IMG/VR virus record: IMGVR_UViG_3300031933_000215
Location: 167,819-231,818 of that record
Strand: one strand, 5' to 3'
Length of the DNA: 64,000 nt
The position numbers and the translations under genes are program-made. Under the pieces are notes generated by a model. It worked only from the letters and a program-made list of their open reading frames with translations. It was not told the origin of the DNA and did not search any database. Shown here piece by piece: positions 881-56,933 of this stretch. Position 1 is the stretch's first letter, and every line of letters starts with the position of its first letter.

Positions 881-3181
881 TTAGGCGGTTTCACCTTTTT
901 CTTTTTCTTTTTCTTCTTTTACTGCATGCTGTTTGTGGGTTTTGATGAAATACTCCAAAGTTGAAGCGTACGCTTTTGCTGTGGAAGCAACGTAAGCATG
1001 GAAATCACCTGTCGGTTTGACGAAGTTTCGGACGAGTTCGTTGAGGGTACGAACCGGAAGGTTGGTTCCGGCGCCGACCAACAGCTCGCCAATAGAAGAC
1101 GGACTCTTGCCGTTATTTTCATCCCTGACGATCTTGAACGTAACGTCGACCTTATCCGAAGACATCTTTCTACGGATCTGCTCGTACTTGTCTTGAGCGT
1201 TTTTCGAGTCCTCAAGAACCTTGACAAGAGTTTCCATGGATTTAAGCATACCCTTGATTTCATCCATGGATGGCAGGTCAACCGCGTCCATTTCCGGATT
1301 TGTACCTGTATTTACAGGCACGAAATCGAAGTATGAGAACTTACTCAACGACGGGTTATTATTCCCCTTCACGAACGATTCGATACGCGTCTGGGGTTGT
1401 ACCCACAAGACCAGCGCACGATCCCCTGGAAGGAGTGAGGAGCGTTTGATGCCCTCATAGCCCTTAACATGGTCGGGCAGATCCGATGCCTTTACATCCG
1501 TAGACCCAGGCAGTGGTTTAATGTGTTTCTGCGGGAGCATGAACAGTTCCCGAGCCGTCAGGTCCATAGTGGCTTTCAGGTCCTTTGACTTTGAGAAGTC
1601 GGTCGACATGATGTCGATGCCTTCTTTTATCATGCTCTCGTATTGGCGTGGGTATTGATTGAACATGTAATTAGACACGTCAATCATTGCCTTAATGGTC
1701 TCTGGTTTTGTGGGTCCGAATACCCCGGAAACCATCAAACGTTTACCGCCTTTAACATTTACCTTCTTACTGCCAGCTCCGGACTCAATGGACTCAACTT
1801 CTTTCTTAAGCTGATCCAGTTTCTTCTTGGTACCGGCGACGTCATCGTTGAATTTACCCCAAATGTGCCGGAGTAGTTCAAACAGTTTTTCCATCGCCTT
1901 CTTGCCGGCAGCGATGGTGGCTTTGAAGCCCGACTGGACGCTTTCCAGAGACACCTGGGTTGCGTACTGACGCGAGCTGGTCTGACCGAACGCTTCATTG
2001 GAGGGAATCAGCTGATCGCCACTGAACGACTCGTCCATATGCTCAAGACCAATGCGGATGGACTCGGCGGTAATGGAATCAATACCATCGCCACGTTCCA
2101 GAGCTTTGGTGAGAAGTGAATGGTAGGCTTCCAGAGACTCGCTCACTTTATCAAAATGGGCACCGTCTTGAGCGACCTGGTTCATGTCCTCGACCATCTT
2201 CTCTTCCGGTGAGGTAATGCCCACATCCAGGGACTCGTCTTCTTCAGCACTGACGGAAACATCGCCTTCGCCTTCACCGCTGGCTTCTTCGGTGCCCTTG
2301 GTGTCGGCCGATACCTCTTCTTCCGGCTTGGGAACGTCCTGTTGTGGACCTTCTTTCACTTCGCCAGTAGTTTCGGCTTCGCCGGATTCGGTTTCTTCAG
2401 ACACAGTCACCGGCTGGTGTTCAACATCGCCGTTTACTTCGGCGTCGCCAGCGGTTTCTTCTTCCGGATCACCGGCTTCGGATTCCACGTCGTCAGCTTC
2501 AGAGACCGATTCTTCTTCGGCTTGGGCTTCAGCTTCCGCAGGAGCTTCTTCAGCGGGTCCTTCTTCGACCACGGGTGTTTTCCCAGCTTCTTCCTCTTCC
2601 CCACCTTCTTCGGCGTCAGAGGCCGGCTCTTCACCAGACTGCTCGTCCACTTCTTCTTTTACAGCTTCGGCATCGTCGGCATCGGCTTCAGCAGACTCTT
2701 CCTCGGCATCGTCGGAAGAGGTTTCTTCTTCCTGCTCGCCATCGTCGGAAGCTTCTTCCTCGCCAGCTTCCTCTTCTTCCTCACCGGCTTCGGATTCTTC
2801 GCCGTCTTCTTCGGCTTCTTCCTCGTCCTTTTCTTCAGACTCTTCGTCTTTCTCTTCGGAGTCGTCGTCGGAGGACTCTTCCTCTTCCTCACGCTCCTCT
2901 TCTTCGTCCTTTTCCTCTTCCTCCTCTTCTTCCTTGCTGTCCTCGGAGGAAACGGTCACTTTTTGGTGACCTTGGTCTCTGGTCGTGTGTTTCGGAGCGT
3001 CGTCGGACGCCGCGTCGAGCTCCGCTACCGCCGGCTTGGCTGTATCCGCATCACCGCTCTGTTCATTGCTGGCGTCAGAGAAATCGTCTTTCGGGGTTTC
3101 ACCGTCCTGAACAACAACCTTCTGGTCTTCGTTGTTGTCTTCGTTACTGGACGTCAGCCATTGCTTGATAAATCGAGACAT
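881..3181 (-). CDS. Inner-head (ejection / inner-body) protein with a very long acidic N-terminal pro-region (phiKZ gp93/gp162 family-like)
   Basis: About 330 D/E-rich N-terminal residues, then SLEAY..L..G.GID..TAE.I.IGL and SNE/SLE motifs matching the S/A/G-x-E prohead protease site. Confidence 0.7.
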   Translation of the reverse strand: MSRFIKQWLTSSNEDNNEDQKVVVQDGETPKDDFSDASNEQSGDADTAKPAVAELDAASDDAPKHTTRDQGHQKVTVSSEDSKEEEEEEEKDEEEEREEEEESSDDDSEEKDEESEEKDEEEAEEDGEESEAGEEEEEAGEEEASDDGEQEEETSSDDAEEESAEADADDAEAVKEEVDEQSGEEPASDAEEGGEEEEAGKTPVVEEGPAEEAPAEAEAQAEEESVSEADDVESEAGDPEEETAGDAEVNGDVEHQPVTVSEETESGEAETTGEVKEGPQQDVPKPEEEVSADTKGTEEASGEGEGDVSVSAEEDESLDVGITSPEEKMVEDMNQVAQDGAHFDKVSESLEAYHSLLTKALERGDGIDSITAESIRIGLEHMDESFSGDQLIPSNEAFGQTSSRQYATQVSLESVQSGFKATIAAGKKAMEKLFELLRHIWGKFNDDVAGTKKKLDQLKKEVESIESGAGSKKVNVKGGKRLMVSGVFGPTKPETIKAMIDVSNYMFNQYPRQYESMIKEGIDIMSTDFSKSKDLKATMDLTARELFMLPQKHIKPLPGSTDVKASDLPDHVKGYEGIKRSSLLPGDRALVLWVQPQTRIESFVKGNNNPSLSKFSYFDFVPVNTGTNPEMDAVDLPSMDEIKGMLKSMETLVKVLEDSKNAQDKYEQIRRKMSSDKVDVTFKIVRDENNGKSPSSIGELLVGAGTNLPVRTLNELVRNFVKPTGDFHAYVASTAKAYASTLEYFIKTHKQHAVKEEKEKEKGETA

Positions 3182-3272
3182 TAGGATTACTCCTCGTTGC
3201 TACGTAACAAATAGAGCTGTATGCTCCAAAGGAAATGCCCGGCCGGGGGCATGTATGATTCCAAAGCATTGG

Positions 3273-15706: not shown

Positions 15707-16417
15707 GTGCGTAAAATCTACATTGATTTGGACGGTCTGTTGGACACCCGACTGGGGACGGTGGCGAAGCTCAACCCCGAAGCGGCGATTCAGGTCATTC
15801 AGGGCGACCGTTATTGGGATCGGGAACACACGGACTGGCACGAACTGTCCAATGGGTACCTGAACAACGAGCAGTTCACCGAAGCCTGGGAACAGCGTGA
15901 CAAGGAAACCCTGAGGGAATCCGTCATGACGTCGATCCTGGCGGTGCTGGGGCGGGTTCTGGCTGAGTACCACCAGAACATGAAAGAAGGCATGACAGCC
16001 GACGAGGTGGCGGTTGAAATCAACGTGGCCCCGTACCCGTTCGACGACGAGGAAATGGAGGAGCTGGCGGACATCCTTAAGATGAACACGTACAAGGATC
16101 TCCCGGTGTTCTTCATCTCCCGTCCCTTGGACGAGCTCACCCCCGAATTCATCCGGGATAACTACGATGCCATGATCCTGTTTGATTTTCATCAATGGGT
16201 GCGCCACCACCACACGGCGTTGGTGAGGTGTCATTGTCGGGACGTGACGTTCATCATTCCCCGGTTGTTCGAGCGCAAACCCGAACGCCTGACGGACGAA
16301 CAAAAGCGCGACGAGTTCGTGGCGTTCCGGTTGGGGTTCTTGGACCACTTGGAGCTGGAGTTCATCGACCCGTCGTGGTTCTCGATGTTCCGCCCATTGA
16401 ACAAACCGCCCGAATAA
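15707..16417 (+). CDS. Conserved phiKZ-like protein with HAD-like N-terminal motif
   Basis: Starts IYIDLDGLLDT (DxD); GTG start after GGAGGA. Confidence 0.55.
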   Translation: MRKIYIDLDGLLDTRLGTVAKLNPEAAIQVIQGDRYWDREHTDWHELSNGYLNNEQFTEAWEQRDKETLRESVMTSILAVLGRVLAEYHQNMKEGMTADEVAVEINVAPYPFDDEEMEELADILKMNTYKDLPVFFISRPLDELTPEFIRDNYDAMILFDFHQWVRHHHTALVRCHCRDVTFIIPRLFERKPERLTDEQKRDEFVAFRLGFLDHLELEFIDPSWFSMFRPLNKPPE

Positions 16418-43240: not shown

Positions 43241-43341
43241 CATTGCCGCTGTAATAAACTACTTATACGGCAGCAACTATGAGGCGGTACACGCCTCGAC
43301 TCATGAGTCTAAACCAACTGCAAAAAAGAGAGAACCGTAAC

Positions 43342-43758
43342 ATGGCACTTAAGACCGAAAAATCCGTCGAGAAGTTTGGCATCTCCGACAAGATGAAGTT
43401 CGACGAAAAATCAGGTGTGATCAGCCTGCCGAAGAACTTCTACGAGAAGACGCTCGAAGACGGTGAGGTGGGTCTGACTCTGGACGAAGTGAAGAAGCTC
43501 CAGAAGCATGACAGTGAAGTGCTGGCAGCCACCACGTTGGCGGCCGGTCAGGTAGCCGCTGAGAAGTTCGAGTCCCATCCCGAACTGAAAGAAATCTCGG
43601 TGAACTACAACCACGGCCAGAACACCTCCTGGGCACACTTCGAGCGCGAGAGCACCACGCCGGTGCGTAACGTTGTTGAAGTCAAAGGCCTCGACGGTGG
43701 TGAGATGGGTAAAGTCCATCGTCATCTGAAAGGACTGTTCGACGACATCAACAGTTAA
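43342..43758 (+). CDS. Conserved jumbo-phage early protein of unknown function
   Basis: ATG 43342; strongly biased codons; own promoter and terminator. Confidence 0.65.
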   Translation: MALKTEKSVEKFGISDKMKFDEKSGVISLPKNFYEKTLEDGEVGLTLDEVKKLQKHDSEVLAATTLAAGQVAAEKFESHPELKEISVNYNHGQNTSWAHFERESTTPVRNVVEVKGLDGGEMGKVHRHLKGLFDDINS

Positions 43759-43842
43759 TCAACTGTTCGCGGACAAAGAGGCGGCCCTTCATTGGGTCGC
43801 CTTTATCCACATTCTTCTTTTTCATTTGTTTAAGGATTACCC

Positions 43843-44529
43843 ATGAGCTTAACATCACTCCCACCGCAGTTCATTGTTTTTGAAGGCGGTGACGGTGCCG
43901 GCAAAAGCACGCAACTCAAACTACTGTCCGAGAAACTCACCGAGCTGGGCATTGACCACATCACCACACGTGAGCCGGGTGGTACCCCCATGGCCGAAGA
44001 GATCCGCGACGTCATGTTGAAAAAACGGGACGAACCGGTGGCTGGAAACACTGAGCTGTTGTTGATTTTCGCCGCTCGCCAACAACACCTGGACAACCGC
44101 ATCCTGCCCGCCTTGGCTGAAGGTCGTTGGGTACTGTGTGATCGGTTCATTGAAACGACCTACGCGTACCAATGTGTTGGTCGCGGTGTCAACGAAGGCT
44201 TCTTTTTCGACATGATGGTGAACGTGGTGGGCGATCATTCCCCGCATCTGACCGTTTACCTCGACGTCGATGACGAGGTCAGCGTGCAGCGCCGAGCGGC
44301 CCGTAAAGACGGTAGTGATCGGATCGACGATGAGACCCAAGAGTTCTTCACTAAGATCAACGACACCCTGCGCGGGTTTGCTTTGAATCTCCCGCACCAT
44401 GCAACGGTGGATGGTAACCAGACCGAAGAAGCGGTAGCGAACGACGTCTTTGCCTTCGTGGAAGACCTCGCCAACAAAACCGACTCTGATCTCGATAGTA
44501 TGGCGGATACGCAAACCGCGTCTCCCTAA
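43843..44529 (+). CDS. tmk: Thymidylate kinase
   Basis: FIVFEGGDGAGKST, TREPGGT, ELLLIFAAR, LCDRF motifs. Confidence 0.95.
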   Translation: MSLTSLPPQFIVFEGGDGAGKSTQLKLLSEKLTELGIDHITTREPGGTPMAEEIRDVMLKKRDEPVAGNTELLLIFAARQQHLDNRILPALAEGRWVLCDRFIETTYAYQCVGRGVNEGFFFDMMVNVVGDHSPHLTVYLDVDDEVSVQRRAARKDGSDRIDDETQEFFTKINDTLRGFALNLPHHATVDGNQTEEAVANDVFAFVEDLANKTDSDLDSMADTQTASP

Positions 44530-44562
44530 CAACAACACTGTGACAAGGTAAATAGGTTAACC

Positions 44563-44766
44563 ATGCAGGATATAGTTTTGGAAGACAACATCGGGCGACT
44601 CTTCGTCAAACAGCGCCACGGACTGAAAACCCATGCTATACTGAAAGAGCTACGCCGGGACAAAGTCGTTTTGCAATGCCCGGAACGGGAAGATCGGTTT
44701 ACGATCAGCGCGAAGGAATTTCGTAAGTTCTACCAGCGGGTGGAAAAACGAAAACCGGCGGCGTAA
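44563..44766 (+). CDS. Hypothetical protein
   Basis: 67-aa ORF before a terminator. Confidence 0.5.
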   Translation: MQDIVLEDNIGRLFVKQRHGLKTHAILKELRRDKVVLQCPEREDRFTISAKEFRKFYQRVEKRKPAA

Positions 44767-44768
44767 CC

Positions 44769-44806
44769 TGCATAACCCTCCCTCCGAAGAGGGAGGGCGT
44801 TATGTT
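44769..44806 (+). terminator. Terminator with CATAA/TTATG arms
   Basis: CCCTCCCTC/GAGGGAGGG stem. Confidence 0.7.
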
Positions 44807-44837
44807 CATCAAACAACTAAGAACGAGTGAGGGACCC

Positions 44838-45137
44838 ATGTACAAAAAACGTATTTGCGACGCCATTCTGGCACTGATTGTTTTCTTCCTGATCATGCTG
44901 GTGACCAGCCCCGACCTGTACGCCAAAGAAAAGACGTACGAGGTGGTGTGTCCGGCATTCAGCGATTGGTGTGTGTTGGTCAAAGGCGACACCGCCATCA
45001 AGTTAACCCGAGACCAGTTGCCCGAATTCATCCCCATCAGTTACGAAGTAGAACGGTGTCACATTGAGTTCTGTGTGAACGCCGACATGGATGTCATTGG
45101 GCTGAACCCGAATTACTTTCTCTGGAGACATCGATGA
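44838..45137 (+). CDS. Exported/membrane-anchored Cys-containing protein
   Basis: N-terminal hydrophobic helix and four Cys; ATG 44838 after GAGGGA. Confidence 0.55.
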   Translation: MYKKRICDAILALIVFFLIMLVTSPDLYAKEKTYEVVCPAFSDWCVLVKGDTAIKLTRDQLPEFIPISYEVERCHIEFCVNADMDVIGLNPNYFLWRHR

Positions 45138-45751
45138 AAATCTTCACCGGTGTGGGCAGTCGTGACATTCCCGGTCCACGGGGACGGCTGCTCAGTTTCA
45201 TTGCGTGCTACCTCGTCCGGTTGGGTTGGGGGTTTCGGTCAGGCGGTGCCGACGGCTCCGACTCGGAATTCGAACGCGGGGCCGTGCGGGCCACCGGGAC
45301 CAGCCAATCGGAACAGATTGAGATCTACCTTCCTTGGCCCGGGTTTAACGGGCGCATCGATGTTCCCGAGAATCGCATCTTGGGGAAGAAGTCCAACCAG
45401 GAAGTCGCGCGTCAAATTGCCAAGAAGATTCACCCTGCTGGTGGTAACCTCAAAGAATCACACCTGAACTTGCATGGCCGAAACGGCTACCAGGTATTGG
45501 GGGAGAACCTAGATTTGCCTTCGGACTTCATCGTCTACTACGCCGAACCCGATGGGAAAGGGAGCGTGAAAGGCGGGACACGGACAGCGGTCGAATTGGC
45601 ACGGTGTTTGGGAATTCCCGAACTCAACCTCTGGTATGATCATGTGGCCCGACTGCTGTTTGATCTGATCAAAGCCAATCACCCCGACCCGTTGTGGGAG
45701 TGTTACAAGCAACTGAAATTGGGCGAGTTCCGGGAATGGCTACATGGTTAA
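45134..45751 (+). CDS. DprA/Smf-like (SLOG superfamily) protein
   Basis: FTGVGSR, RSGGADGSD..FE, EIYLPW.GFN, HGRN.YQVLG and GGTRTAV motifs. Confidence 0.8.
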   Translation: MKIFTGVGSRDIPGPRGRLLSFIACYLVRLGWGFRSGGADGSDSEFERGAVRATGTSQSEQIEIYLPWPGFNGRIDVPENRILGKKSNQEVARQIAKKIHPAGGNLKESHLNLHGRNGYQVLGENLDLPSDFIVYYAEPDGKGSVKGGTRTAVELARCLGIPELNLWYDHVARLLFDLIKANHPDPLWECYKQLKLGEFREWLHG

Positions 45752-45895
45752 CTTTTCCAGGGTATCCCCAATATTATGTCAGACCTGTCCTGACACGATC
45801 TTTTACAATTTGATTCGCGGACACACTCAGGCGGTTTTACCGTCCCAAGCATCTGCAAATACAGATGCGGTCTTTACGAAGGCCAAAACCACGGT

Positions 45896-45926
45896 AGCCC
45901 GGGCACCGCTTCGGCGGTGCCCGCTA
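45896..45926 (+). terminator. Strong hairpin (probable terminator)
   Basis: CGGGCACCGC-TTCG-GCGGTGCCCG. Confidence 0.7.
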
Positions 45927-45970
45927 TTCCGTCACCCCATAAAAACTACCCCGGGTGTGATGGTATGTAC

Positions 45971-46038
45971 ACGTCGTGTTATCTGATGAGTTCCCGACGT
46001 TAAAAGGAACGAAACTCCCACGGAGTCATAAGAGGCAC
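45971..46038 (+). ncRNA. Type I hammerhead ribozyme with loop II pseudoknot
   Basis: Core CUGAUGA 45983-89; stem II GUUCC/GGAAC; GAAA 46011-14; stem III ACUCC/GGAGU; GUC cleavage site at 46027; stem I UUAU/AUAA; ACGUCG (45971-76) is complementary to loop II CGACGU (45995-46000). Confidence 0.88.
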
Positions 46039-46320
46039 ATGCGCCTCCCTTCATCGAGTTTACGGTTGGAGATGTTAGGCACCTGCTGGGTGGTGTGATT
46101 GGTAGTCACACCGCTCGTAACCGTACGGGCGACGTACCTTACCAGTCGTCGCCAAGTTGTCGCTTGGGCTTATTCGTGCTAAACAAGGAACTATCCCTGA
46201 GCAGGCAGCCTGTAGGCGTTTTCTACAGCGCGGGTGATCCGGAGATCCGCCTCGAAACTCAAGACGCCTATGGGGTGCTTAAATGGCATCTTGGCCTGTC
46301 CTTCGGGGCAGGCCTCTATA
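46028..46320 (+). ncRNA. Candidate structured non-coding RNA released by the hammerhead
   Basis: Multiple nested helices, no credible ORF, ends at terminator 46293-46314. Confidence 0.5.
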
Positions 46321-46322
46321 CC
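46293..46322 (+). terminator. Terminator hairpin
   Basis: GGCCTGTCC-TTCG-GGGCAGGCC. Confidence 0.7.
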
Positions 46323-46344
46323 GCATCTGAACGAGGGTCACATC

Positions 46345-46587
46345 ATGGCTTTTATTGCAACGGTACAAATCTTGGTAGACGAGCCCACCGCCGCTGAGGC
46401 GCGTGAGAACTTGGAACAGCTGTTTGAATCCGCCCGGGTTACATCGGTAGATCAAACCGATGACGATCGAAACTGGTTGGTGGATTGGGTGTTTGACGAG
46501 GTCTACGCCGCTGGCGAAGATGTCGATGACGCCATCACCAACGACACTTACGAAGAAGGGGACGCGTTCGAAGGAATGGACGACTGA
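46345..46587 (+). CDS. Small acidic hypothetical protein
   Basis: ATG 46345 after GAGGG. Confidence 0.6.
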   Translation: MAFIATVQILVDEPTAAEARENLEQLFESARVTSVDQTDDDRNWLVDWVFDEVYAAGEDVDDAITNDTYEEGDAFEGMDD

Positions 46588-46601
46588 TCCATAATTGACA
46601 C

Positions 46602-46617
46602 CTATATCACTCAGGTG
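46602..46617 (+). promoter_or_regulatory. Early promoter motif CTATATCAC-TCAG-GTG
   Basis: Identical to the copy at 16476. Confidence 0.7.
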
Positions 46618-46671
46618 AGTTAAGTACTCAAAAAAAAAGACACACAACTGCAACCACAAAAGGAATCAACC

Positions 46672-47304
46672 ATGCAAATGAACACAAACTACTACATGAG
46701 CATGTCCCCTAAAGAACTGCGCGAGCGGGTCATGGAGATTCTGCACATGAAGTCCAAGGTCGTGCCTCAGAGCAATATGGTCGCCGGGGGTATCATGGAC
46801 AAGCGCCGACTCAGTCCATTCACGGCGGCGGACGTTACCAACGCACTCGCCCCAATGCTCCAGAAACTGGAGAAGGTCATCGCTCAAGACGGCTACACGG
46901 TATTCTCCGATGTGCGTCTCTTGGAAGAACCGGTCAATGAGGATGTCAATGAAGACCAGCCCGCGTGGCAACCCCCCAAGCACACGTTTGCGATCGTCCC
47001 TAACGGTGAATCGCATGTGGTGTACGTTGAGTTCCCCAGTGACATGTTCTTTGCGATCATGGCCAACCTGCTGCCAGGCTTTGGAAATGGCGGTTTTGGC
47101 ACATACCAGCCGGGCCCACGGCCCACCATGGGCATGGGTGATCCGACCGGTGGATACCAGCAGTTTGGGGCACAGCCTGACCCACGCAATTACGGCATGT
47201 ACCCAAACCCATACCCCATCCAGCCGGAACACCAGTTCATGTTCCTAGTCCGTTTCTTGCTGATCGAATCGAACCATGAAGTCCGAGACATGGGCTTTAT
47301 GTAA
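46672..47304 (+). CDS. Early hypothetical protein
   Basis: AAGGA RBS; downstream of an early promoter; followed by a terminator. Confidence 0.65.
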   Translation: MQMNTNYYMSMSPKELRERVMEILHMKSKVVPQSNMVAGGIMDKRRLSPFTAADVTNALAPMLQKLEKVIAQDGYTVFSDVRLLEEPVNEDVNEDQPAWQPPKHTFAIVPNGESHVVYVEFPSDMFFAIMANLLPGFGNGGFGTYQPGPRPTMGMGDPTGGYQQFGAQPDPRNYGMYPNPYPIQPEHQFMFLVRFLLIESNHEVRDMGFM

Positions 47305-47312
47305 GCCGTCGA

Positions 47313-47345
47313 ACAAGAGGACCTTCGGGTCCTCTTTTTTTTTTG
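47313..47345 (+). terminator. Rho-independent terminator
   Basis: AAGAGGACC-TTCG-GGTCCTCTT plus poly-T. Confidence 0.85.
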
Positions 47346-47392
47346 TCGCGTCCCCACGGCCCAATGATGTGATCGTACATTAAGGGGGCGTT

Positions 47393-47743
47393 GTGATTTA
47401 CGTTTCTATTATACTGGCCACGTTGTTTGTGCAGATACCGAACATCTGGGCCGTTAAAGTACTACAAACGAACGGTCAACTTCGGTCAATATTGTTCATC
47501 GCACTGATGTGTCTTCCAGCCAGTTACGTCGCCACAGTTTGTTATGCCTACTATTATGGTCGGGGTTATGAAACACTGAGTTACCCCACCTTGGCGGTCA
47601 CCGCCTATGGAACCGGGTTGTTAGTCAGTGTGTTGATTCAAGTGGTGGTACTAAAGGCCAAAACCGTCACCGGTGTGGAAGTACTGGGTATGACACTGGT
47701 GATTGCCGGCTTGTTGTTGATCGTCTTTAAAGATCGTCTGTAA
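47393..47743 (+). CDS. Four-TM membrane protein, DMT/SMR (EamA-like) fold
   Basis: 116 aa with four hydrophobic helices and C-terminal G..LVIAG. Confidence 0.55.
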   Translation: MIYVSIILATLFVQIPNIWAVKVLQTNGQLRSILFIALMCLPASYVATVCYAYYYGRGYETLSYPTLAVTAYGTGLLVSVLIQVVVLKAKTVTGVEVLGMTLVIAGLLLIVFKDRL

Positions 47744-47806
47744 CTTTTTTTTTATTTATCCCGGTTATGAGTATGATTACCAAACCTATCAAGTAAGGAT
47801 GTCCTA

Positions 47807-48241
47807 ATGCAGTTGTTTATCGATTGTGAATTTAACAGTATGGGCGGTGGATTGATTTCCATGGCACTGGTCAGTGAAGACGGGGAACGTGAGTTCTATG
47901 AAGTGGTCGAATGCTCCGAAGCCATCGACCCGTGGGTCAAAGAAAACGTCATGCCGATCCTAGAGAAAGACCCCATTCCACTGGTGGAGTTTCAGGACCG
48001 GTTGAAAAAGTTCCTGGGTCAGTTCCCAGCGGTTCACGTGACCGCCGACTACCCGGACGACATCAAGCACTTCTGTAACGCGGTGATTACCGGTGCAGGA
48101 GAATGGTTTGAGGTCCAACCCTTAACCATGGAAGTCGATGAGGAATGCAGTGCCAAAGCTTCGGCCGTACCACACAACGCCCTACATGATGCCCGCGCCA
48201 TCCGTAAAAGCTGGTTGGCCGCCAACGGCATTGCTGAGTAA
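47807..48241 (+). CDS. DEDDh 3'-5' exoribonuclease (Rv2179c/DUF5051-like)
   Basis: LFIDCEF, LISMALV, WVKENV, D...D and HNALHDAR motifs. Confidence 0.8.
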   Translation: MQLFIDCEFNSMGGGLISMALVSEDGEREFYEVVECSEAIDPWVKENVMPILEKDPIPLVEFQDRLKKFLGQFPAVHVTADYPDDIKHFCNAVITGAGEWFEVQPLTMEVDEECSAKASAVPHNALHDARAIRKSWLAANGIAE

Positions 48242-54527: not shown

Positions 54528-56933
54528 ATGCCAAAGATTGATGACATGCACGCTCCGTACATACTACCTATTACGCCAAGCGACGCCGACGTTCAGTATT
54601 TCGGTGTTATTAAAGACATTTTGGATGAGCAGCAAAGCACGTCCAAAGTGGACCGCACCGGTGTAGGTACGCAAGGGGTGTTCGGCCGTCAAATGCGCTT
54701 TGACATCAGCAACAAGAAACTTCCACTGCTCACCAGTAAGAAGGTGTTCACCAAGGGCATCGTTCACGAACTGCTCTGGATGTTGTCAGGCGATACCAAC
54801 GTGCAGTACCTCAACGCCCACGGCGTGAGCATTTGGAACAGTTGGGTAAAACCAGAAACAGCACAATACCGTCGAGCCACCTGGGATGACTGGTTCGCCA
54901 TCATCCGACGTAGAAAACTGGAACCCTCGTTCGTTTTCATGTTGCGTGAGCATCTGAGCGAAGCCGAGATTCTCCACTTCCATATCAAGGGCGAATTCCC
55001 GTGGGCCGGTCAGGACGTCGGTGATGACCATCCAGCGGTCAATGCAATCTTGAAGTGGATGAAAGACCACGACATGCCGGAACGGTTCTTGGTGGCTGGG
55101 GAACTCCCCAAGATCTATCAACACCAGTGGCGTCAATGGGAAGACACTCGACTGGTTCCGATGGATATCTGGGTTACCGACGACTGGTACCAAAACAACG
55201 GCTTTGTGCTGTTGAATGAGTACTTCGATGCCGAGTTGGGTGAGGAAATTGCGATCGTCCACCGGAAGATCGATCAAATTCAGAAGGTCATTGACCAACT
55301 GAAAACCAACCCCGATTCTCGACGGATCATTGTCAGTGCCTGGAACGCGGCGGAGATCGAAGAGATGGCACTCCCACCGTGTTTTATACCTGGAAGTCTG
55401 GTTAGCACACCCGACGGTTATAAGAAAATAGAGACTCTAACTGAGGGTGATGTTGTTCACTCCGGGACCGGTCAGGAACGCAGAATAAACAAAGTATGGA
55501 GAACTCCATATAAAGGCAAAATACTTTATATTAGACCTGCCCTAGTGGGTGTTCCAATCGCCTGTACTCCAAATCACCCATTTCTAGTTAGAAATAAGGG
55601 ATGGGTGGACGCTAAAGATCTAAAGGAAGGGGATTACTTAGCAATCCCGAAAACCAAGTCAATTAAAGATTTGGAGTTTAACTACAGTATCAATCATGGG
55701 TCGAGTGGTAAGCAAATACATCGTACTGTAAAATGTACAAACGAAGATTACTACACATTTGGTTACTTTCTCGGTAATGGGTGGGCAAGTGTGAACGAAA
55801 ATAGAATATCGTTTGCCATTCCTCACAGTAAAGTTGATGAAATACTTCCACGTTTAAGGAAAACAATAAAAGTATCAAGAAAACCCGGTAGTGGCGACAA
55901 TGTATCTACATACATGACTCATTCTGAAAAATGGATCTCAGTATTTAGAAGTTTTGGGAGTGGTGCTCATAATAAAATTATCCCAGACTGGGTTATGACT
56001 TCGACAATGGGTGCCAAGAAAGCTTTTATCGATGGGTTCTTAGCGGCAGATGGGTATCGGATTGACGAGGGTCGTTTCGATATTTGTTGTACGTCACCCA
56101 ATATTATTTTGGGGCTCCAACGTCTGTTTGCTGAACAAGATCACGCTGTCGGTACTGGGTTTCAAGTTCGTCCAGATAAAACGGAAATAGAAGGCAGGGT
56201 GGTGAACCAAAAGAATACATACCACCTAAAATCAAGAAGTGGATCGAAATCTAAGAATAACACCAATGTGGAATATGATGACGAGTACATGTGGGTACCA
56301 ATAAGAAAAATATTCTACGGTGATTCAAACACAACAGTTTATAATCTTGATGTTGAGGAGGAACACACGTACACTGTAAGTAACATAGTTAATCACAATT
56401 GTCATACCCTGTTCCAGTTTTACACCCGTGAGATGGACTCCAGTGAGCGTGAGAGTTGGTTGGTAACCCATCTGGGTCGTGAGACCATGGACCAGTACCG
56501 TCGTGAGCTGGGCGAGGTCAGTCAAGCCAACGACGGTGACGCGGTGTGCGATACCGTGACGTTACACGCTCTGTTGGACCATTACAAGGTTCCACGGCGG
56601 GCGTTGTCGTGTCAACTCTATCAGCGCAGTGCGGACTACCCGATTGGAGTGCCCTTCAATATCGTTCAATACTCGCTTCTGACTCACCTGGTGGCTCGTA
56701 CAGTTGGGATGGCCACGGACGAGTTCATTTGGACCGGTGGTGATTGTCACATCTACAAGAACCAGTTTGAAGGCATCCACGAACAGTTGGATCGGGAGCC
56801 TTTGAACGTTCCGGCCCCGACGGTGGAATTGAACCCTGAGATTGACAACCTGTTCGACTTTACGTACGACGACATTAAGATCGTTGGATATGAAAGTCAC
56901 CCGGTGGTCAAATTCCCACCCGCTGCCGTGTAA
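54528..56933 (+). CDS. thyA: Thymidylate synthase interrupted by an intein (mature ~461 aa)
   Basis: DRTGVGT, ELLWMLSG, YQHQWR, SRRIIVSAWN, LPP[intein]CH, YQRSAD..GVPFN and HIYKN motifs. Confidence 0.95.
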   Translation: MPKIDDMHAPYILPITPSDADVQYFGVIKDILDEQQSTSKVDRTGVGTQGVFGRQMRFDISNKKLPLLTSKKVFTKGIVHELLWMLSGDTNVQYLNAHGVSIWNSWVKPETAQYRRATWDDWFAIIRRRKLEPSFVFMLREHLSEAEILHFHIKGEFPWAGQDVGDDHPAVNAILKWMKDHDMPERFLVAGELPKIYQHQWRQWEDTRLVPMDIWVTDDWYQNNGFVLLNEYFDAELGEEIAIVHRKIDQIQKVIDQLKTNPDSRRIIVSAWNAAEIEEMALPPCFIPGSLVSTPDGYKKIETLTEGDVVHSGTGQERRINKVWRTPYKGKILYIRPALVGVPIACTPNHPFLVRNKGWVDAKDLKEGDYLAIPKTKSIKDLEFNYSINHGSSGKQIHRTVKCTNEDYYTFGYFLGNGWASVNENRISFAIPHSKVDEILPRLRKTIKVSRKPGSGDNVSTYMTHSEKWISVFRSFGSGAHNKIIPDWVMTSTMGAKKAFIDGFLAADGYRIDEGRFDICCTSPNIILGLQRLFAEQDHAVGTGFQVRPDKTEIEGRVVNQKNTYHLKSRSGSKSKNNTNVEYDDEYMWVPIRKIFYGDSNTTVYNLDVEEEHTYTVSNIVNHNCHTLFQFYTREMDSSERESWLVTHLGRETMDQYRRELGEVSQANDGDAVCDTVTLHALLDHYKVPRRALSCQLYQRSADYPIGVPFNIVQYSLLTHLVARTVGMATDEFIWTGGDCHIYKNQFEGIHEQLDREPLNVPAPTVELNPEIDNLFDFTYDDIKIVGYESHPVVKFPPAAV
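55380..56399 (+). mobile_element. Intein (340 aa) with LAGLIDADG homing endonuclease
   Basis: Starts CFIPGSLVSTPDG; block B TPNHPFL; FGYFLGNGW and FIDGFLAADG motifs; ends VYNLDVEEEHTY....HN followed by +1 Cys; AT-rich. Confidence 0.93.

What the first reader, a model, noticed from the sequence alone, without database searches (positions are those of the whole stretch)
45964..46050. Type I hammerhead ribozyme with pseudoknot in a jumbo phage intergenic gap
Seen: all conserved core nucleotides (C3-U-G-A-U-G8-A9, G12-A-A-A15, G-U-C17), perfect stems II and III, a 4-bp stem I (extendable across a bulge), and a 6-bp match between loop II (CGACGU) and the 5' flank (ACGUCG). Known: loop II/stem I tertiary contacts, including pseudoknots, give fast cleavage at physiological Mg. 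A TATG (phiKZ late-promoter core) lies at 45964-67, just 5' of the ribozyme. Inference: the ribozyme is a dedicated 5'-end maturation device that cuts after C46027 and leaves a 5'-OH product. The product can refold into a GAGGC/GCCUC hairpin (46032-46047) that blocks re-ligation. I know of no description of this in nucleus-forming phages.
Basis: partly seen in the sequence, partly recalled or inferred. Interest (0 to 1): 0.85.

Follow-up and report, generated by a model that had tools for sequence, protein, structure and literature searches.

The report
Pseudoknotted hammerhead ribozyme in jumbo phage
A genuine self-cutting hammerhead RNA sits between two genes of a phiKZ-like giant phage, where it most likely trims the front end of a structured non-coding RNA; the ribozyme type is long known in phages, but this sub-family had gone unannotated in giant phages.

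Summary
Window 45971-46031 (+) is a complete type I hammerhead. It has a canonical core, a 5-bp stem II, a 5-bp stem III, a 4-bp stem I and a pseudoknot between the 5' flank and loop II. It is the only such motif in the window, and chance expectation is below 0.005.

A covariance model built without this sequence scores it 64.4 bits (E about 1e-15). Rfam's own models stay below threshold (22.1 vs 34 bits).

The same sub-family occurs unannotated in published phages: Erwinia RAY and other Agricanvirus, Klebsiella Miami, and Pseudomonas ZC03/ZC08. phiKZ lacks it. The pseudoknot and stem II covary across these phages.

In the window the ribozyme lies in a lineage-variable insert between two phiKZ-type terminators. 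It is followed by a roughly 290-nt highly structured RNA and then an 80-aa acidic protein gene. Two of five related lineages have it, one of them with a U4C core change.

The best reading is that it sets the 5' end of the downstream RNA, leaving a 5'-OH. The same layout recurs in other phages, including upstream of two GOLLD RNAs.

The TATG promoter is plausible but unproven. The "anti-religation hairpin" idea is not supported. This is a new member of a known kind.

The parts
45971..45976 (+). 5' strand of the pseudoknot (ACGUCG). It pairs with loop II 45995-46000. The conserved part is 45972-45976.
   Evidence: Sequence. Covariation on alignment A2: the variable pair is CG in 4 sequences, AU in 2 and GC in 1; the GUCG/CGAC core is invariant. 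Chance of a 6-bp match is 0.015.
45979..45982 (+). Stem I, 5' strand (UUAU). It pairs with 46028-46031.
   Evidence: Descriptor parse. Stem I differs but stays paired in L014, Miami, KPN8, ZC03, ZC08 and RAY.
45983..45989 (+). Catalytic core strand C3-U4-G5-A6-U7-G8-A9 (CUGAUGA).
45990..46010 (+). Stem II (GUUCC/GGAAC, closed by G10.1-C11.1) with the 11-nt loop II CGACGUUAAAA.
   Evidence: Four of five stem II pairs show compensatory changes across seven sequences.
46011..46027 (+). G12-A13-A14, then stem III (ACUCC/GGAGU including A15.1-U16.1, loop CAC), then C17. The predicted scissile bond is 46027/46028.
46028..46031 (+). Stem I, 3' strand (AUAA). These are the first four nucleotides of the 5'-OH product.
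46032..46047 (+). Hairpin GAGGC-ACAUGC-GCCUC directly abutting stem I. It is conserved in L014.
   Evidence: Comparable hairpins follow stem I in Miami, ZC03, ZC08, L002 and L004.
46028..46324 (+). Predicted 3' cleavage product up to terminator T2: a roughly 297-nt highly structured non-coding RNA, or the 5' UTR of the next gene.
   Evidence: MFE -128 kcal/mol, z = -4.57. No conserved ORF. Helix 46209-19 with 46264-75 shows the series C-G, U.G, U-A in the window, L019, and L014/L010.
46293..46324 (+). phiKZ-type terminator T2 (GGCCUGUCC-UUCG-GGGCAGGCC plus UCUAUACCGC), 20 nt before the ATG at 46345.
   Evidence: Motif as in PMC10914365. About 11 hairpin-plus-tail sites among 19 tail-motif matches in the window. 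Conserved in all five lineages.
45894..45931 (+). phiKZ-type terminator T1, which ends the conserved upstream sRNA-like block.
45942..45967 (+). Candidate promoter P2: AAAACTACC (45942-50) plus TATG (45964-67, with G as +1).
   Evidence: Motifs compared with PMC4666361. This is the only such combination in the window. L010 has TTATG at the same distance from T1. It is unproven.
46345..46587 (+). Downstream gene: an 80-aa acidic protein (pI 4.05) found only in this phage clade.

Best explanation
Window 45971-46031 (+) is a catalytically competent type I hammerhead ribozyme. It belongs to a pseudoknot-stabilised sub-family that is spread patchily among phages. The sub-family layout is: 5' flank NGUCG, then 6 nt including the stem I 5' strand, then CUGAUGA, then a 5-bp stem II with loop CGACNYUAAAN.

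It is transcribed with the surrounding + strand genes. Transcription starts either from a phiKZ-type TATG start at 45967 or by read-through of the weak terminator T1. The ribozyme cuts itself between C46027 and A46028.

Because the topology is type I, nearly the whole ribozyme stays on the discarded upstream piece, which ends in a 2',3'-cyclic phosphate. The downstream RNA is released with a 5'-OH and only four ribozyme nucleotides.

That downstream RNA is a roughly 290-nt highly structured element. It ends at the phiKZ-type terminator T2, or runs on as the 5' UTR of the 80-aa gene. The ribozyme therefore acts as a 5'-end-defining, leader-removing device for a structured phage RNA.

Shown here: the motif, its statistics, covariation, sub-family membership, its position between two terminators, and its lineage-variable presence. 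Inferred: that it cleaves, where transcription starts, and the benefit of a 5'-OH end.
For: - Motif statistics. The motif is complete and unique in the window. Chance expectation is 0.005 or less.
- Leave-out model. The covariance model built without this sequence gives 64.4 bits, E about 1e-15.
- Covariation. Cells paired are 92% against 26-44% when partners are slid. The variable pseudoknot pair is CG in 4 sequences, AU in 2 and GC in 1. Four of five stem II pairs show compensatory changes.
- Homologues with the same architecture. These occur in L014, Miami, KPN8, BUCTxx100, ZC03, ZC08 and RAY and in eight further IMG/VR contigs.
- Strand. It is co-oriented with all genes from 43279 to 48241.
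- Downstream RNA. It is non-coding and strongly structured, z = -4.57.
- Terminators. Both T1 and T2 match the phiKZ terminator motif.
- Same layout elsewhere. In L002 and L004 a sigma70-like promoter sits 10-15 nt before the hammerhead, and C17 lies 395 and 397 nt before the conserved GOLLD motif. That is about where hammerhead-less GOLLD genes have their promoter or a tRNA end. L036 and L037 have hammerhead, 215-235 nt RNA, phiKZ-type terminator, then SD-ATG.
- Relative without the ribozyme. L010 has TTATG at the equivalent spot and runs straight into the shared 3' part of the RNA.
Against: - No cleavage or transcript data exist for this uncultured phage.
- Rfam's curated hammerhead models stay below gathering score: 22.1 vs 34 bits.
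- Stem I is only four A-U pairs and is not predicted to form without the tertiary contact.
- Three of five related lineages lack the ribozyme altogether (L010, L015, L016). The one other carrier, L014, has U4C in the core and a weakened stem III. The element is therefore dispensable and may be decaying in places.
- The TATG is weak evidence for a promoter (p about 0.05) and is not conserved in L014.
- In many other phages the ribozyme follows a tRNA. There it is not at the 5' end of a primary transcript.
Confidence: 0.6

Rival explanations
1. Transcript separator. Transcription comes from upstream, either the conserved TATG at 45775-78 that drives the sRNA-like block or the DprA operon, and reads through T1. 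The hammerhead's job is then to uncouple the upstream RNA from the downstream RNA or mRNA, as proposed for prophage hammerheads that flank genes. It would not be trimming a dedicated primary transcript.
For: - T1 and T2 both deviate from the TTTAT tail consensus (CUAUU and CUAUA). In relatives without the ribozyme the 80-aa gene sits directly behind T1 and T2 in tandem, so read-through must occur.
- In L029, L031, L032, L035 and L036 the ribozyme starts 2-27 nt after a tRNA or tRNA-like 3' end, so it is clearly internal to a longer transcript.
- Perreault et al. proposed operon processing for phage hammerheads (PMC3088659).
Against: - AAAACTACC-N13-TATG just upstream resembles a phiKZ middle/late promoter, and L010 has TTATG at the same position.
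- L002 and L004 place the ribozyme right after a promoter.
- The consequence for the downstream RNA, a clean 5'-OH end, is the same in both models. This rival differs mainly in where transcription starts.
Confidence: 0.25
2. A dispensable passenger or relic. The hammerhead arrived with an inserted RNA module, or as a selfish element, and has no role the phage depends on. It may still cleave, or it may be decaying.
For: - It is present in 2 of 5 related lineages. L014 carries U4C and a weaker stem III.
- It is absent from phiKZ.
- Its distribution is patchy across unrelated phage groups, and the flanking RNAs share no sequence similarity.
Against: - In the window the core is fully canonical.
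- The pseudoknot and all three stems are kept by compensatory changes across distant phages, which indicates selection on the fold.
- The position relative to the downstream structured RNA recurs.
Confidence: 0.12
3. Chance resemblance to the hammerhead consensus.
For: Rfam gathering thresholds are not reached.
Against: Expected number per window is 0.005 or less. The independent model gives 64.4 bits. Homologues show covariation.
Confidence: 0.01

Closest known systems
Pseudoknot-stabilised hammerhead ribozymes of bacteria and phages (Perreault et al. 2011, PMC3088659; Rfam clan CL00010, Hammerhead_1 RF00163)
   Same: Same catalytic core, three-way junction, G10.1-C11.1 and A15.1-U16.1 pairs, and cleavage after H17. 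A stem I / stem II contact made by a 4-6 bp pseudoknot was reported for all three topologies and shown to be needed for fast cleavage at 0.5 mM Mg2+. Occurrence in phage and prophage intergenic regions was also reported.
   Different: This sub-family has a fixed layout: NGUCG flank, 6 nt to the core, and an 11-nt loop II CGACNYUAAAN. It scores below Rfam's gathering thresholds in every instance examined. It is unannotated in the published genomes that carry it. No paper in the searchable library links hammerheads with jumbo or nucleus-forming phages.
Theta (minimal HDV-like) ribozymes next to phage tRNAs (PMC10879173)
   Same: Both are small self-cleaving ribozymes embedded in phage non-coding RNA loci and used to mature the end of a neighbouring RNA. 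Many members of the present hammerhead sub-family also sit in tRNA arrays.
   Different: HDV-like ribozymes cut at their own 5' edge and so finish the 3' end of the upstream tRNA. A type I hammerhead cuts at its own 3' edge and so finishes the 5' end of the downstream RNA. The fold is different.
glmS ribozyme and synthetic ribozyme insulators such as RiboJ (from my own knowledge, not tested here)
   Same: Both are ribozymes in a 5' leader that remove promoter-proximal sequence and leave a 5'-OH on the functional RNA. RiboJ also pairs the ribozyme with an adjacent hairpin.
   Different: glmS is metabolite-dependent and has an unrelated fold. RiboJ is engineered from a type III satellite hammerhead that stays on the 3' product. 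Here the ribozyme is discarded with the leader.
GOLLD RNA loci of phages (RF02032)
   Same: In L002 and L004 a type I hammerhead with the same stem II precedes GOLLD. Its cleavage site lies about 395 nt before the conserved GOLLD motif, where other GOLLD genes start. This is the same 'hammerhead then large structured RNA' layout as in the window.
   Different: The window's downstream RNA has no Rfam match to GOLLD, ROOL or anything else and is much shorter. Only 2 of 8 GOLLD loci examined carry the hammerhead.

Membership tests
Hammerhead ribozyme | Conserved core C3 U4 G5 A6 N7 G8 A9 / G12 A13 A14 / A15.1-U16.1 / H17 (not G) | tested here: met
   CUGAUGA 45983-89, GAA 46011-13, A46014-U46026, C46027.
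Hammerhead ribozyme | Three helices around the core with G10.1-C11.1 closing stem II, kept by compensatory changes in relatives | tested here: met
   Stems I/II/III are 4/5/5 bp. Four of five stem II pairs covary. Stems I and III differ in sequence but stay paired in L014, Miami, ZC03, ZC08, RAY and L029-L037.
Hammerhead ribozyme | [quoted passage not shown] | tested here: met
   ACGUCG/CGACGU. Five bp are conserved. The variable pair is CG in 4 sequences, AU in 2 and GC in 1, with none unpaired.
Hammerhead ribozyme | Score at or above the curated Rfam gathering threshold | tested here: not met
   RF00163 gives 22.1 bits vs GA 34. RF00008 gives 17.5 vs 48.5. The same models also miss clean relatives such as Miami and ZC03. 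A sub-family model built without the window gives 64.4 bits.
Hammerhead ribozyme | Site-specific self-cleavage giving 2',3'-cyclic phosphate and 5'-OH | not testable with these tools
   Needs in vitro transcription and cleavage, or 5'-OH end mapping.
Type I topology | Stem I open; stems II and III closed by loops | tested here: met
   Loop II is 11 nt and loop III is 3 nt. The stem I strands are 45979-82 and 46028-31.
phiKZ late (nvRNAP) promoter | 5'-TATG-3' with G as the transcription start, plus undefined downstream determinants | tested here: inconclusive
   TATG is present at 45964-67. [quoted passage not shown] There are 125 TATG on the strand. L010 has TTATG at the equivalent position but L014 has TATAG.
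phiKZ-type intrinsic terminator | GC-rich hairpin followed by YTTATKYYGT | tested here: met
   T2 is hairpin 46293-46314 plus UCUAUACCGC, matching 7 of 10 tail positions; relatives have TTTATACCGT or TTTATTCCGT. T1 is hairpin plus GCUAUUCCG. About 11 hairpin-plus-tail sites among 19 tail-motif matches in the window.
GOLLD / ROOL large phage RNAs (for the downstream RNA) | Match to RF02032 or RF03087 | tested here: not met
   No such match, even at E up to 10, on 45700-47400.

The most novel reading that the evidence does not exclude
Type I pseudoknotted hammerheads may be a general, modular phage device for giving large structured non-coding RNAs and leaders a defined 5'-OH end. The targets would include GOLLD, unknown 250-1000-nt RNAs in tRNA arrays, and 5' UTR RNAs of phiKZ-like phages. 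The device would be interchangeable with a direct promoter start or a tRNA boundary. In nucleus-forming phages the 5'-OH could matter for RNA stability, export or escape from 5'-end-dependent host nucleases. The roughly 290-nt RNA released here would then be a new functional phage RNA.
Probability: 0.3. Interest if true: 0.6.

Novelty: new member of a known kind. Interest (0 to 1): 0.4.

Why it matters
There are four reasons it matters.

- **Annotation gap.** A well-defined hammerhead sub-family is invisible to Rfam's gathering thresholds. It is therefore unannotated in published genomes of giant phages, including lab-tractable ones (RAY, Miami) and the smaller ZC03/ZC08. That gives an immediate experimental handle on what natural phage hammerheads do.
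- **A testable function.** The recurrent order is start or tRNA, then hammerhead, then structured RNA, then terminator. This suggests that phage hammerheads make the 5' ends of non-coding RNAs. That role has been hard to pin down since 2011.
- **A link to GOLLD.** The occasional hammerhead at the 5' boundary of GOLLD bears on how these cage-forming RNAs are matured.
- **RNA content of the locus.** This intergenic gap of a phiKZ-like phage holds at least two structured RNAs and two terminators, which points to RNA-level regulation.

Tried and rejected
- **Rfam, whole window.** No match at gathering threshold. E-value mode first gave only a partial type III alignment using a different GUC. I rejected that reading because it leaves stem III with 2 bp and no stem I hairpin.
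- **tRNA scan of the window.** None found.
- **Megablast of 44000-48000 against INPHARED.** No match.
- **The search for related loci with the DprA-like protein in IMG/VR.** Only the window's own contig came back.
- **Sub-family pattern in metagenome contigs.** Only the window's own contig and one coding-region chance match, L021, which lacks C3-U4.
- **Rfam on the downstream RNA, for GOLLD, ROOL or a second ribozyme that could give a circular RNA.** Nothing found.
- **Sequence similarity among downstream RNAs of different phages.** None outside close relatives.
- **ORF 45744-45986 (80 aa) across the gap.** Rejected as a gene because the frame is broken in L010, L015 and L016.
- **Relaxed-descriptor hit at 15999-16177.** It has CCGACGA, a 3-bp stem II and a 150-nt stem III loop, lies in an ORF-dense stretch (15707-16417), and has no model support. 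I treat it as chance.
- **phiKZ genome scan with model R1 and the descriptor.** No credible hammerhead.
- **General HH-GOLLD link.** Only 2 of 8 GOLLD loci carry a hammerhead, so it is an option rather than a rule.
- **Nested MFE folding of 45967-46050.** It prefers the pseudoknot helix over stem II because the program cannot draw pseudoknots. The hammerhead fold plus the pseudoknot duplex is about as stable (-14.8 and -7.0 against -22.1 kcal/mol).

Full report
**1. What is in the sequence**

- CUGAUGA lies at 45983-89.
- A 5-bp stem II (GUUCC/GGAAC, closed by G10.1-C11.1) carries an 11-nt loop, CGACGUUAAAA.
- GAAA lies at 46011-14.
- A 5-bp stem III (ACUCC/GGAGU, including A15.1-U16.1) follows, and C17 is at 46027.
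- Stem I is 4 bp (UUAU 45979-82 with AUAA 46028-31).
- The flank ACGUCG (45971-76) is complementary to the first six bases of loop II.
- Stems II and III are closed and stem I is open, so the topology is type I and the scissile bond is 46027/46028.

**2. Is it more than chance?**

- My own type I descriptor finds this as the only hit on either strand of the window, even at relaxed stem lengths.
- In 400 Markov simulations of the window, the expected number is 0.0375 (relaxed), 0.005 (medium) and 0 (observed stringency).
- Rfam gives nothing at gathering threshold.
- In E-value mode Hammerhead_1 aligns end to end at 22.1 bits (GA 34, E = 0.022).
- An earlier partial type III alignment is structurally poor, and I reject it.

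The decisive statistic is a covariance model (R1). I built it from eight other phage sequences, without the window or its relative L014. It scores 45971-46035 at 64.4 bits, E about 1.4e-15. The next hit in the window is at 9.7 bits.

**3. Relatives and covariation**

blastn of the whole gap against INPHARED hits only with the ribozyme part. The hits are:
- 17 Erwinia phage records; all 14 listed are Agricanvirus-type (RAY, Ea35-70, Deimos-Minion and others);
- Klebsiella Miami, YC1, KPN8 and phiKp_32;
- Stenotrophomonas BUCTxx100 and Raoultella P1;
- Pseudomonas ZC03 and ZC08.

At nearly all of these places no feature is annotated.

Parsing these sequences and eight IMG/VR contigs found with a sub-family pattern shows one architecture:
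- flank NGUCG;
- exactly 6 nt to CUGAUGA;
- a 5-bp stem II;
- an 11-nt loop CGACNYUAAAN.

On a seven-sequence alignment (A2), 92% of cells pair, against 26-44% when partners are slid. The variable pseudoknot pair is C-G in four sequences, A-U in two and G-C in one. Four of five stem II pairs carry compensatory changes. The sixth pseudoknot pair of the window is lineage-specific.

Stems I and III differ freely but stay paired. RAY-like copies carry a roughly 100-nt insert in stem III and an imperfect stem II.

Rfam models report none of these copies at E up to 0.1 or at gathering threshold. That explains why they are unannotated.

phiKZ itself has no copy.

**4. The phage and the locus**

The window comes from a 231.8-kb IMG/VR contig. 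Several lines mark it as phiKZ-like.
- It encodes split RNAP beta subunits.
- It has homologues of phiKZ gp181, gp182, thymidylate kinase, RNase H, gp201 and gp203 in phiKZ order.
- It uses phiKZ-type terminators, a hairpin followed by TTTATRYCG, at about 11 hairpin-plus-tail sites in the window.

All genes from 43279 to 48241 are on the + strand.

The ribozyme lies in the 593-nt gap between a DprA-like gene (45134-45751) and an 80-aa acidic protein gene (46345-46587, pI 4.05).

Syntenic relatives were fetched through both flanking proteins. Five lineages share three things:
- a conserved ..AATAnTATGTC.. just after the DprA stop;
- a roughly 150-nt hairpin-rich sRNA-like block that ends in terminator T1 (45894-45931);
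- a second terminator T2 (46293-46324), about 20 nt before the 80-aa gene.

Between T1 and T2 the length varies: 355 nt in the window, about 250 in L014, about 110 in L010, and about 40 and 25 in L015 and L016.

Only the window lineage and L014 carry the ribozyme. R1 confirms its absence from L010, L015 and L016. L014's copy has CCGAUGA (U4 to C) and a weakened stem III, but a compensated stem I and pseudoknot.

**5. What is released**

The 3' product, 46028 to T2, is non-coding and strongly structured.
- ORFs across the gap are not conserved.
- MFE is -128 kcal/mol with z = -4.57.
- Its 3' third is shared with L010 and L014. This includes a helix (46209-19 with 46264-75) whose variable pair runs C-G (window), U.G (L019), U-A (L014, L010).
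- It matches no Rfam family.

**6. How it most likely works**

Type I topology leaves the ribozyme on the upstream fragment and only AUAA on the downstream RNA. The natural reading is therefore 5'-end definition of the downstream RNA. The same order of parts recurs elsewhere.
- In L002 and L004 a sigma70-like promoter (TTGACA-17-TAnnAT) lies 10-15 nt before the ribozyme. C17 lies 395 and 397 nt before the conserved GOLLD motif.
- In six other GOLLD loci there is no hammerhead upstream; in five of them (L038, L040, L043; L041, L042) a promoter-like sequence or a tRNA end lies about 400 nt before the motif.
- L036 and L037 have hammerhead, 215-235 nt of structured RNA, a phiKZ-type terminator, then SD-ATG.
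- In L029, L031, L032, L035 and L036 the ribozyme starts 2-27 nt after a tRNA or tRNA-like 3' end, inside tRNA arrays. It is followed by 250-1000 nt without a tRNA; in L031, L032 and L036 that stretch contains ORFs of 89-233 aa, so it is not established to be non-coding.

So the ribozyme marks a 5' boundary whether transcription begins just upstream or far upstream.

**7. The promoter question**

TATG with G as +1 is the phiKZ late-promoter core, but it is necessary and not sufficient (PMC4666361).
- In favour of a promoter at 45964-67: AAAACTACC lies about 21 nt upstream (compare the phiKZ middle motif AAanTTACc). This is the only such combination in the window. L010 has TTATG at the same distance from T1.
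- Against: the chance p is about 0.05, and L014 has TATAG.

I rate this as plausible and unproven. The rival is read-through from the conserved upstream TATG across a weak T1.

**8. The hairpin claim**

GAGGC/GCCUC (46032-47) exists and is conserved in L014. It contains no stem I nucleotide, so it cannot form by refolding of the product and cannot sequester stem I. Similar hairpins abut stem I in Miami, ZC03, ZC08, L002 and L004. They may stack on the short stem I; that is inference. A 4-bp A-U stem I already favours product release.

**9. Energetics**

The nested hammerhead fold with the 3' hairpin is -14.8 kcal/mol. The pseudoknot duplex adds about -7. The nested MFE (-22.1) uses the pseudoknot helix instead of stem II because pseudoknots cannot be drawn. 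The ribozyme fold is therefore competitive.

**10. Comparison with what is known, and novelty**

Hammerheads in phage and prophage intergenic regions, type I/II/III pseudoknots, and tolerated core variants were all described in 2011 (PMC3088659). No paper in the searchable library links hammerheads to jumbo or nucleus-forming phages, or to GOLLD. Even so, homologues sit in published genomes of such phages.

This is a new member of a known kind. The useful extras are a defined sub-family that Rfam misses, and a recurrent genomic logic that makes the function testable.

Confidence that it is a true hammerhead is above 0.9. Confidence in the 5'-end-defining role is about 0.6.

Noticed in passing
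window 45765-45931 (+): A conserved sRNA-like gene. It starts at the G of a conserved ..AATAnTATGTC.. (a phiKZ late-promoter-like TATG at 45775-78). It has four to five hairpins and ends in a phiKZ-type terminator. It is present in all five related lineages. Of 33 predicted pairs, 10 show compensatory change. A single-stranded stretch CGAUCUUUUACAAUUUGAU is nearly invariant. MFE z = -5.43.
   Followed up: partly
window 46209-46219 with 46264-46275, and 46293-46324: A conserved leader element before the 80-aa gene. A long-range helix has a variable pair that runs C-G (window), U.G (L019), U-A (L014, L010). It is followed by terminator T2 only 20 nt before the ATG, which looks like an attenuator-type 5' UTR.
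   Followed up: partly
window 46345-46587 (+): An 80-aa, very acidic protein (24 D/E, 3 K/R, pI 4.05) with homologues only in this phage clade. There is no PHROG match. The composition is reminiscent of small DNA-mimic or anti-defence proteins, but this is untested.
   Followed up: no
L002 7079-7033 (-) with GOLLD 6653-6186; L004 6566-6528 (-) with GOLLD 6146-5724: A type I hammerhead sits just after a sigma70-like promoter, with its cleavage site 395 and 397 nt before a conserved GOLLD motif. That is at the 5' edge of GOLLD RNA. Only 2 of 8 GOLLD loci of this subgroup have it; five of the other six show a promoter-like sequence or a tRNA end about 400 nt before the motif. I found no paper mentioning this.
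   Followed up: partly
L003 7407-7472 (-) and 6413-6371 (-): A Pistol ribozyme (42.1 bits, above GA) lies about 1 kb upstream of a type I hammerhead on the same strand of a 51-kb phage contig. The RNA between them would carry a 5'-OH and a 2',3'-cyclic phosphate.
   Followed up: no
L029, L031, L032/L033, L035 (ZC08), L036, L025 (ZC03): Members of the hammerhead sub-family start 2-27 nt after the 3' end of a tRNA or tRNA-like element inside phage tRNA arrays. They are followed by 250-1000 nt without a tRNA. In ZC03 and ZC08 this stretch is a conserved, highly paired roughly 250-nt RNA.
   Followed up: partly
L023 (Erwinia phage RAY) 1348-1411 and 1894-3163; L024 (Miami) 2251-3240: RAY has a 1.27-kb gene-free gap around its hammerhead. 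It also has a partial Y RNA-like (YrlA) match at 44.5 bits (GA 69) and a T-arm-like GGTTCAACTCC upstream. Miami has a similar T-arm-like motif. Its annotated minus-strand ORFs gp268 and gp269 lie over the stretch downstream of the hammerhead, which the BUCTxx100 annotation leaves empty.
   Followed up: no
window 54528-56933 (+): A thymidylate-synthase-like ORF of 801 aa matches the family at residues 16-286 and 599-797. A roughly 340-aa insert between them hits other families. This may be an intein or an inserted domain.
   Followed up: no
window, for example 10944, 16442, 20973, 22137, 43197, 48272, 62438 (+); 62879, 56950, 18441 (-): A hairpin followed by (Y)TTTATRYCG recurs at gene ends. 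This matches the phiKZ terminator motif published for phiKZ and 201phi2-1.
   Followed up: partly
Rfam models RF00163 / RF00008 against window, L023-L025, L029-L037: The curated hammerhead models do not report any of the roughly 15 sub-family members at gathering threshold. For Miami and ZC03 they do not report them even at E up to 0.1. Genome annotation pipelines will therefore miss them.
   Followed up: yes
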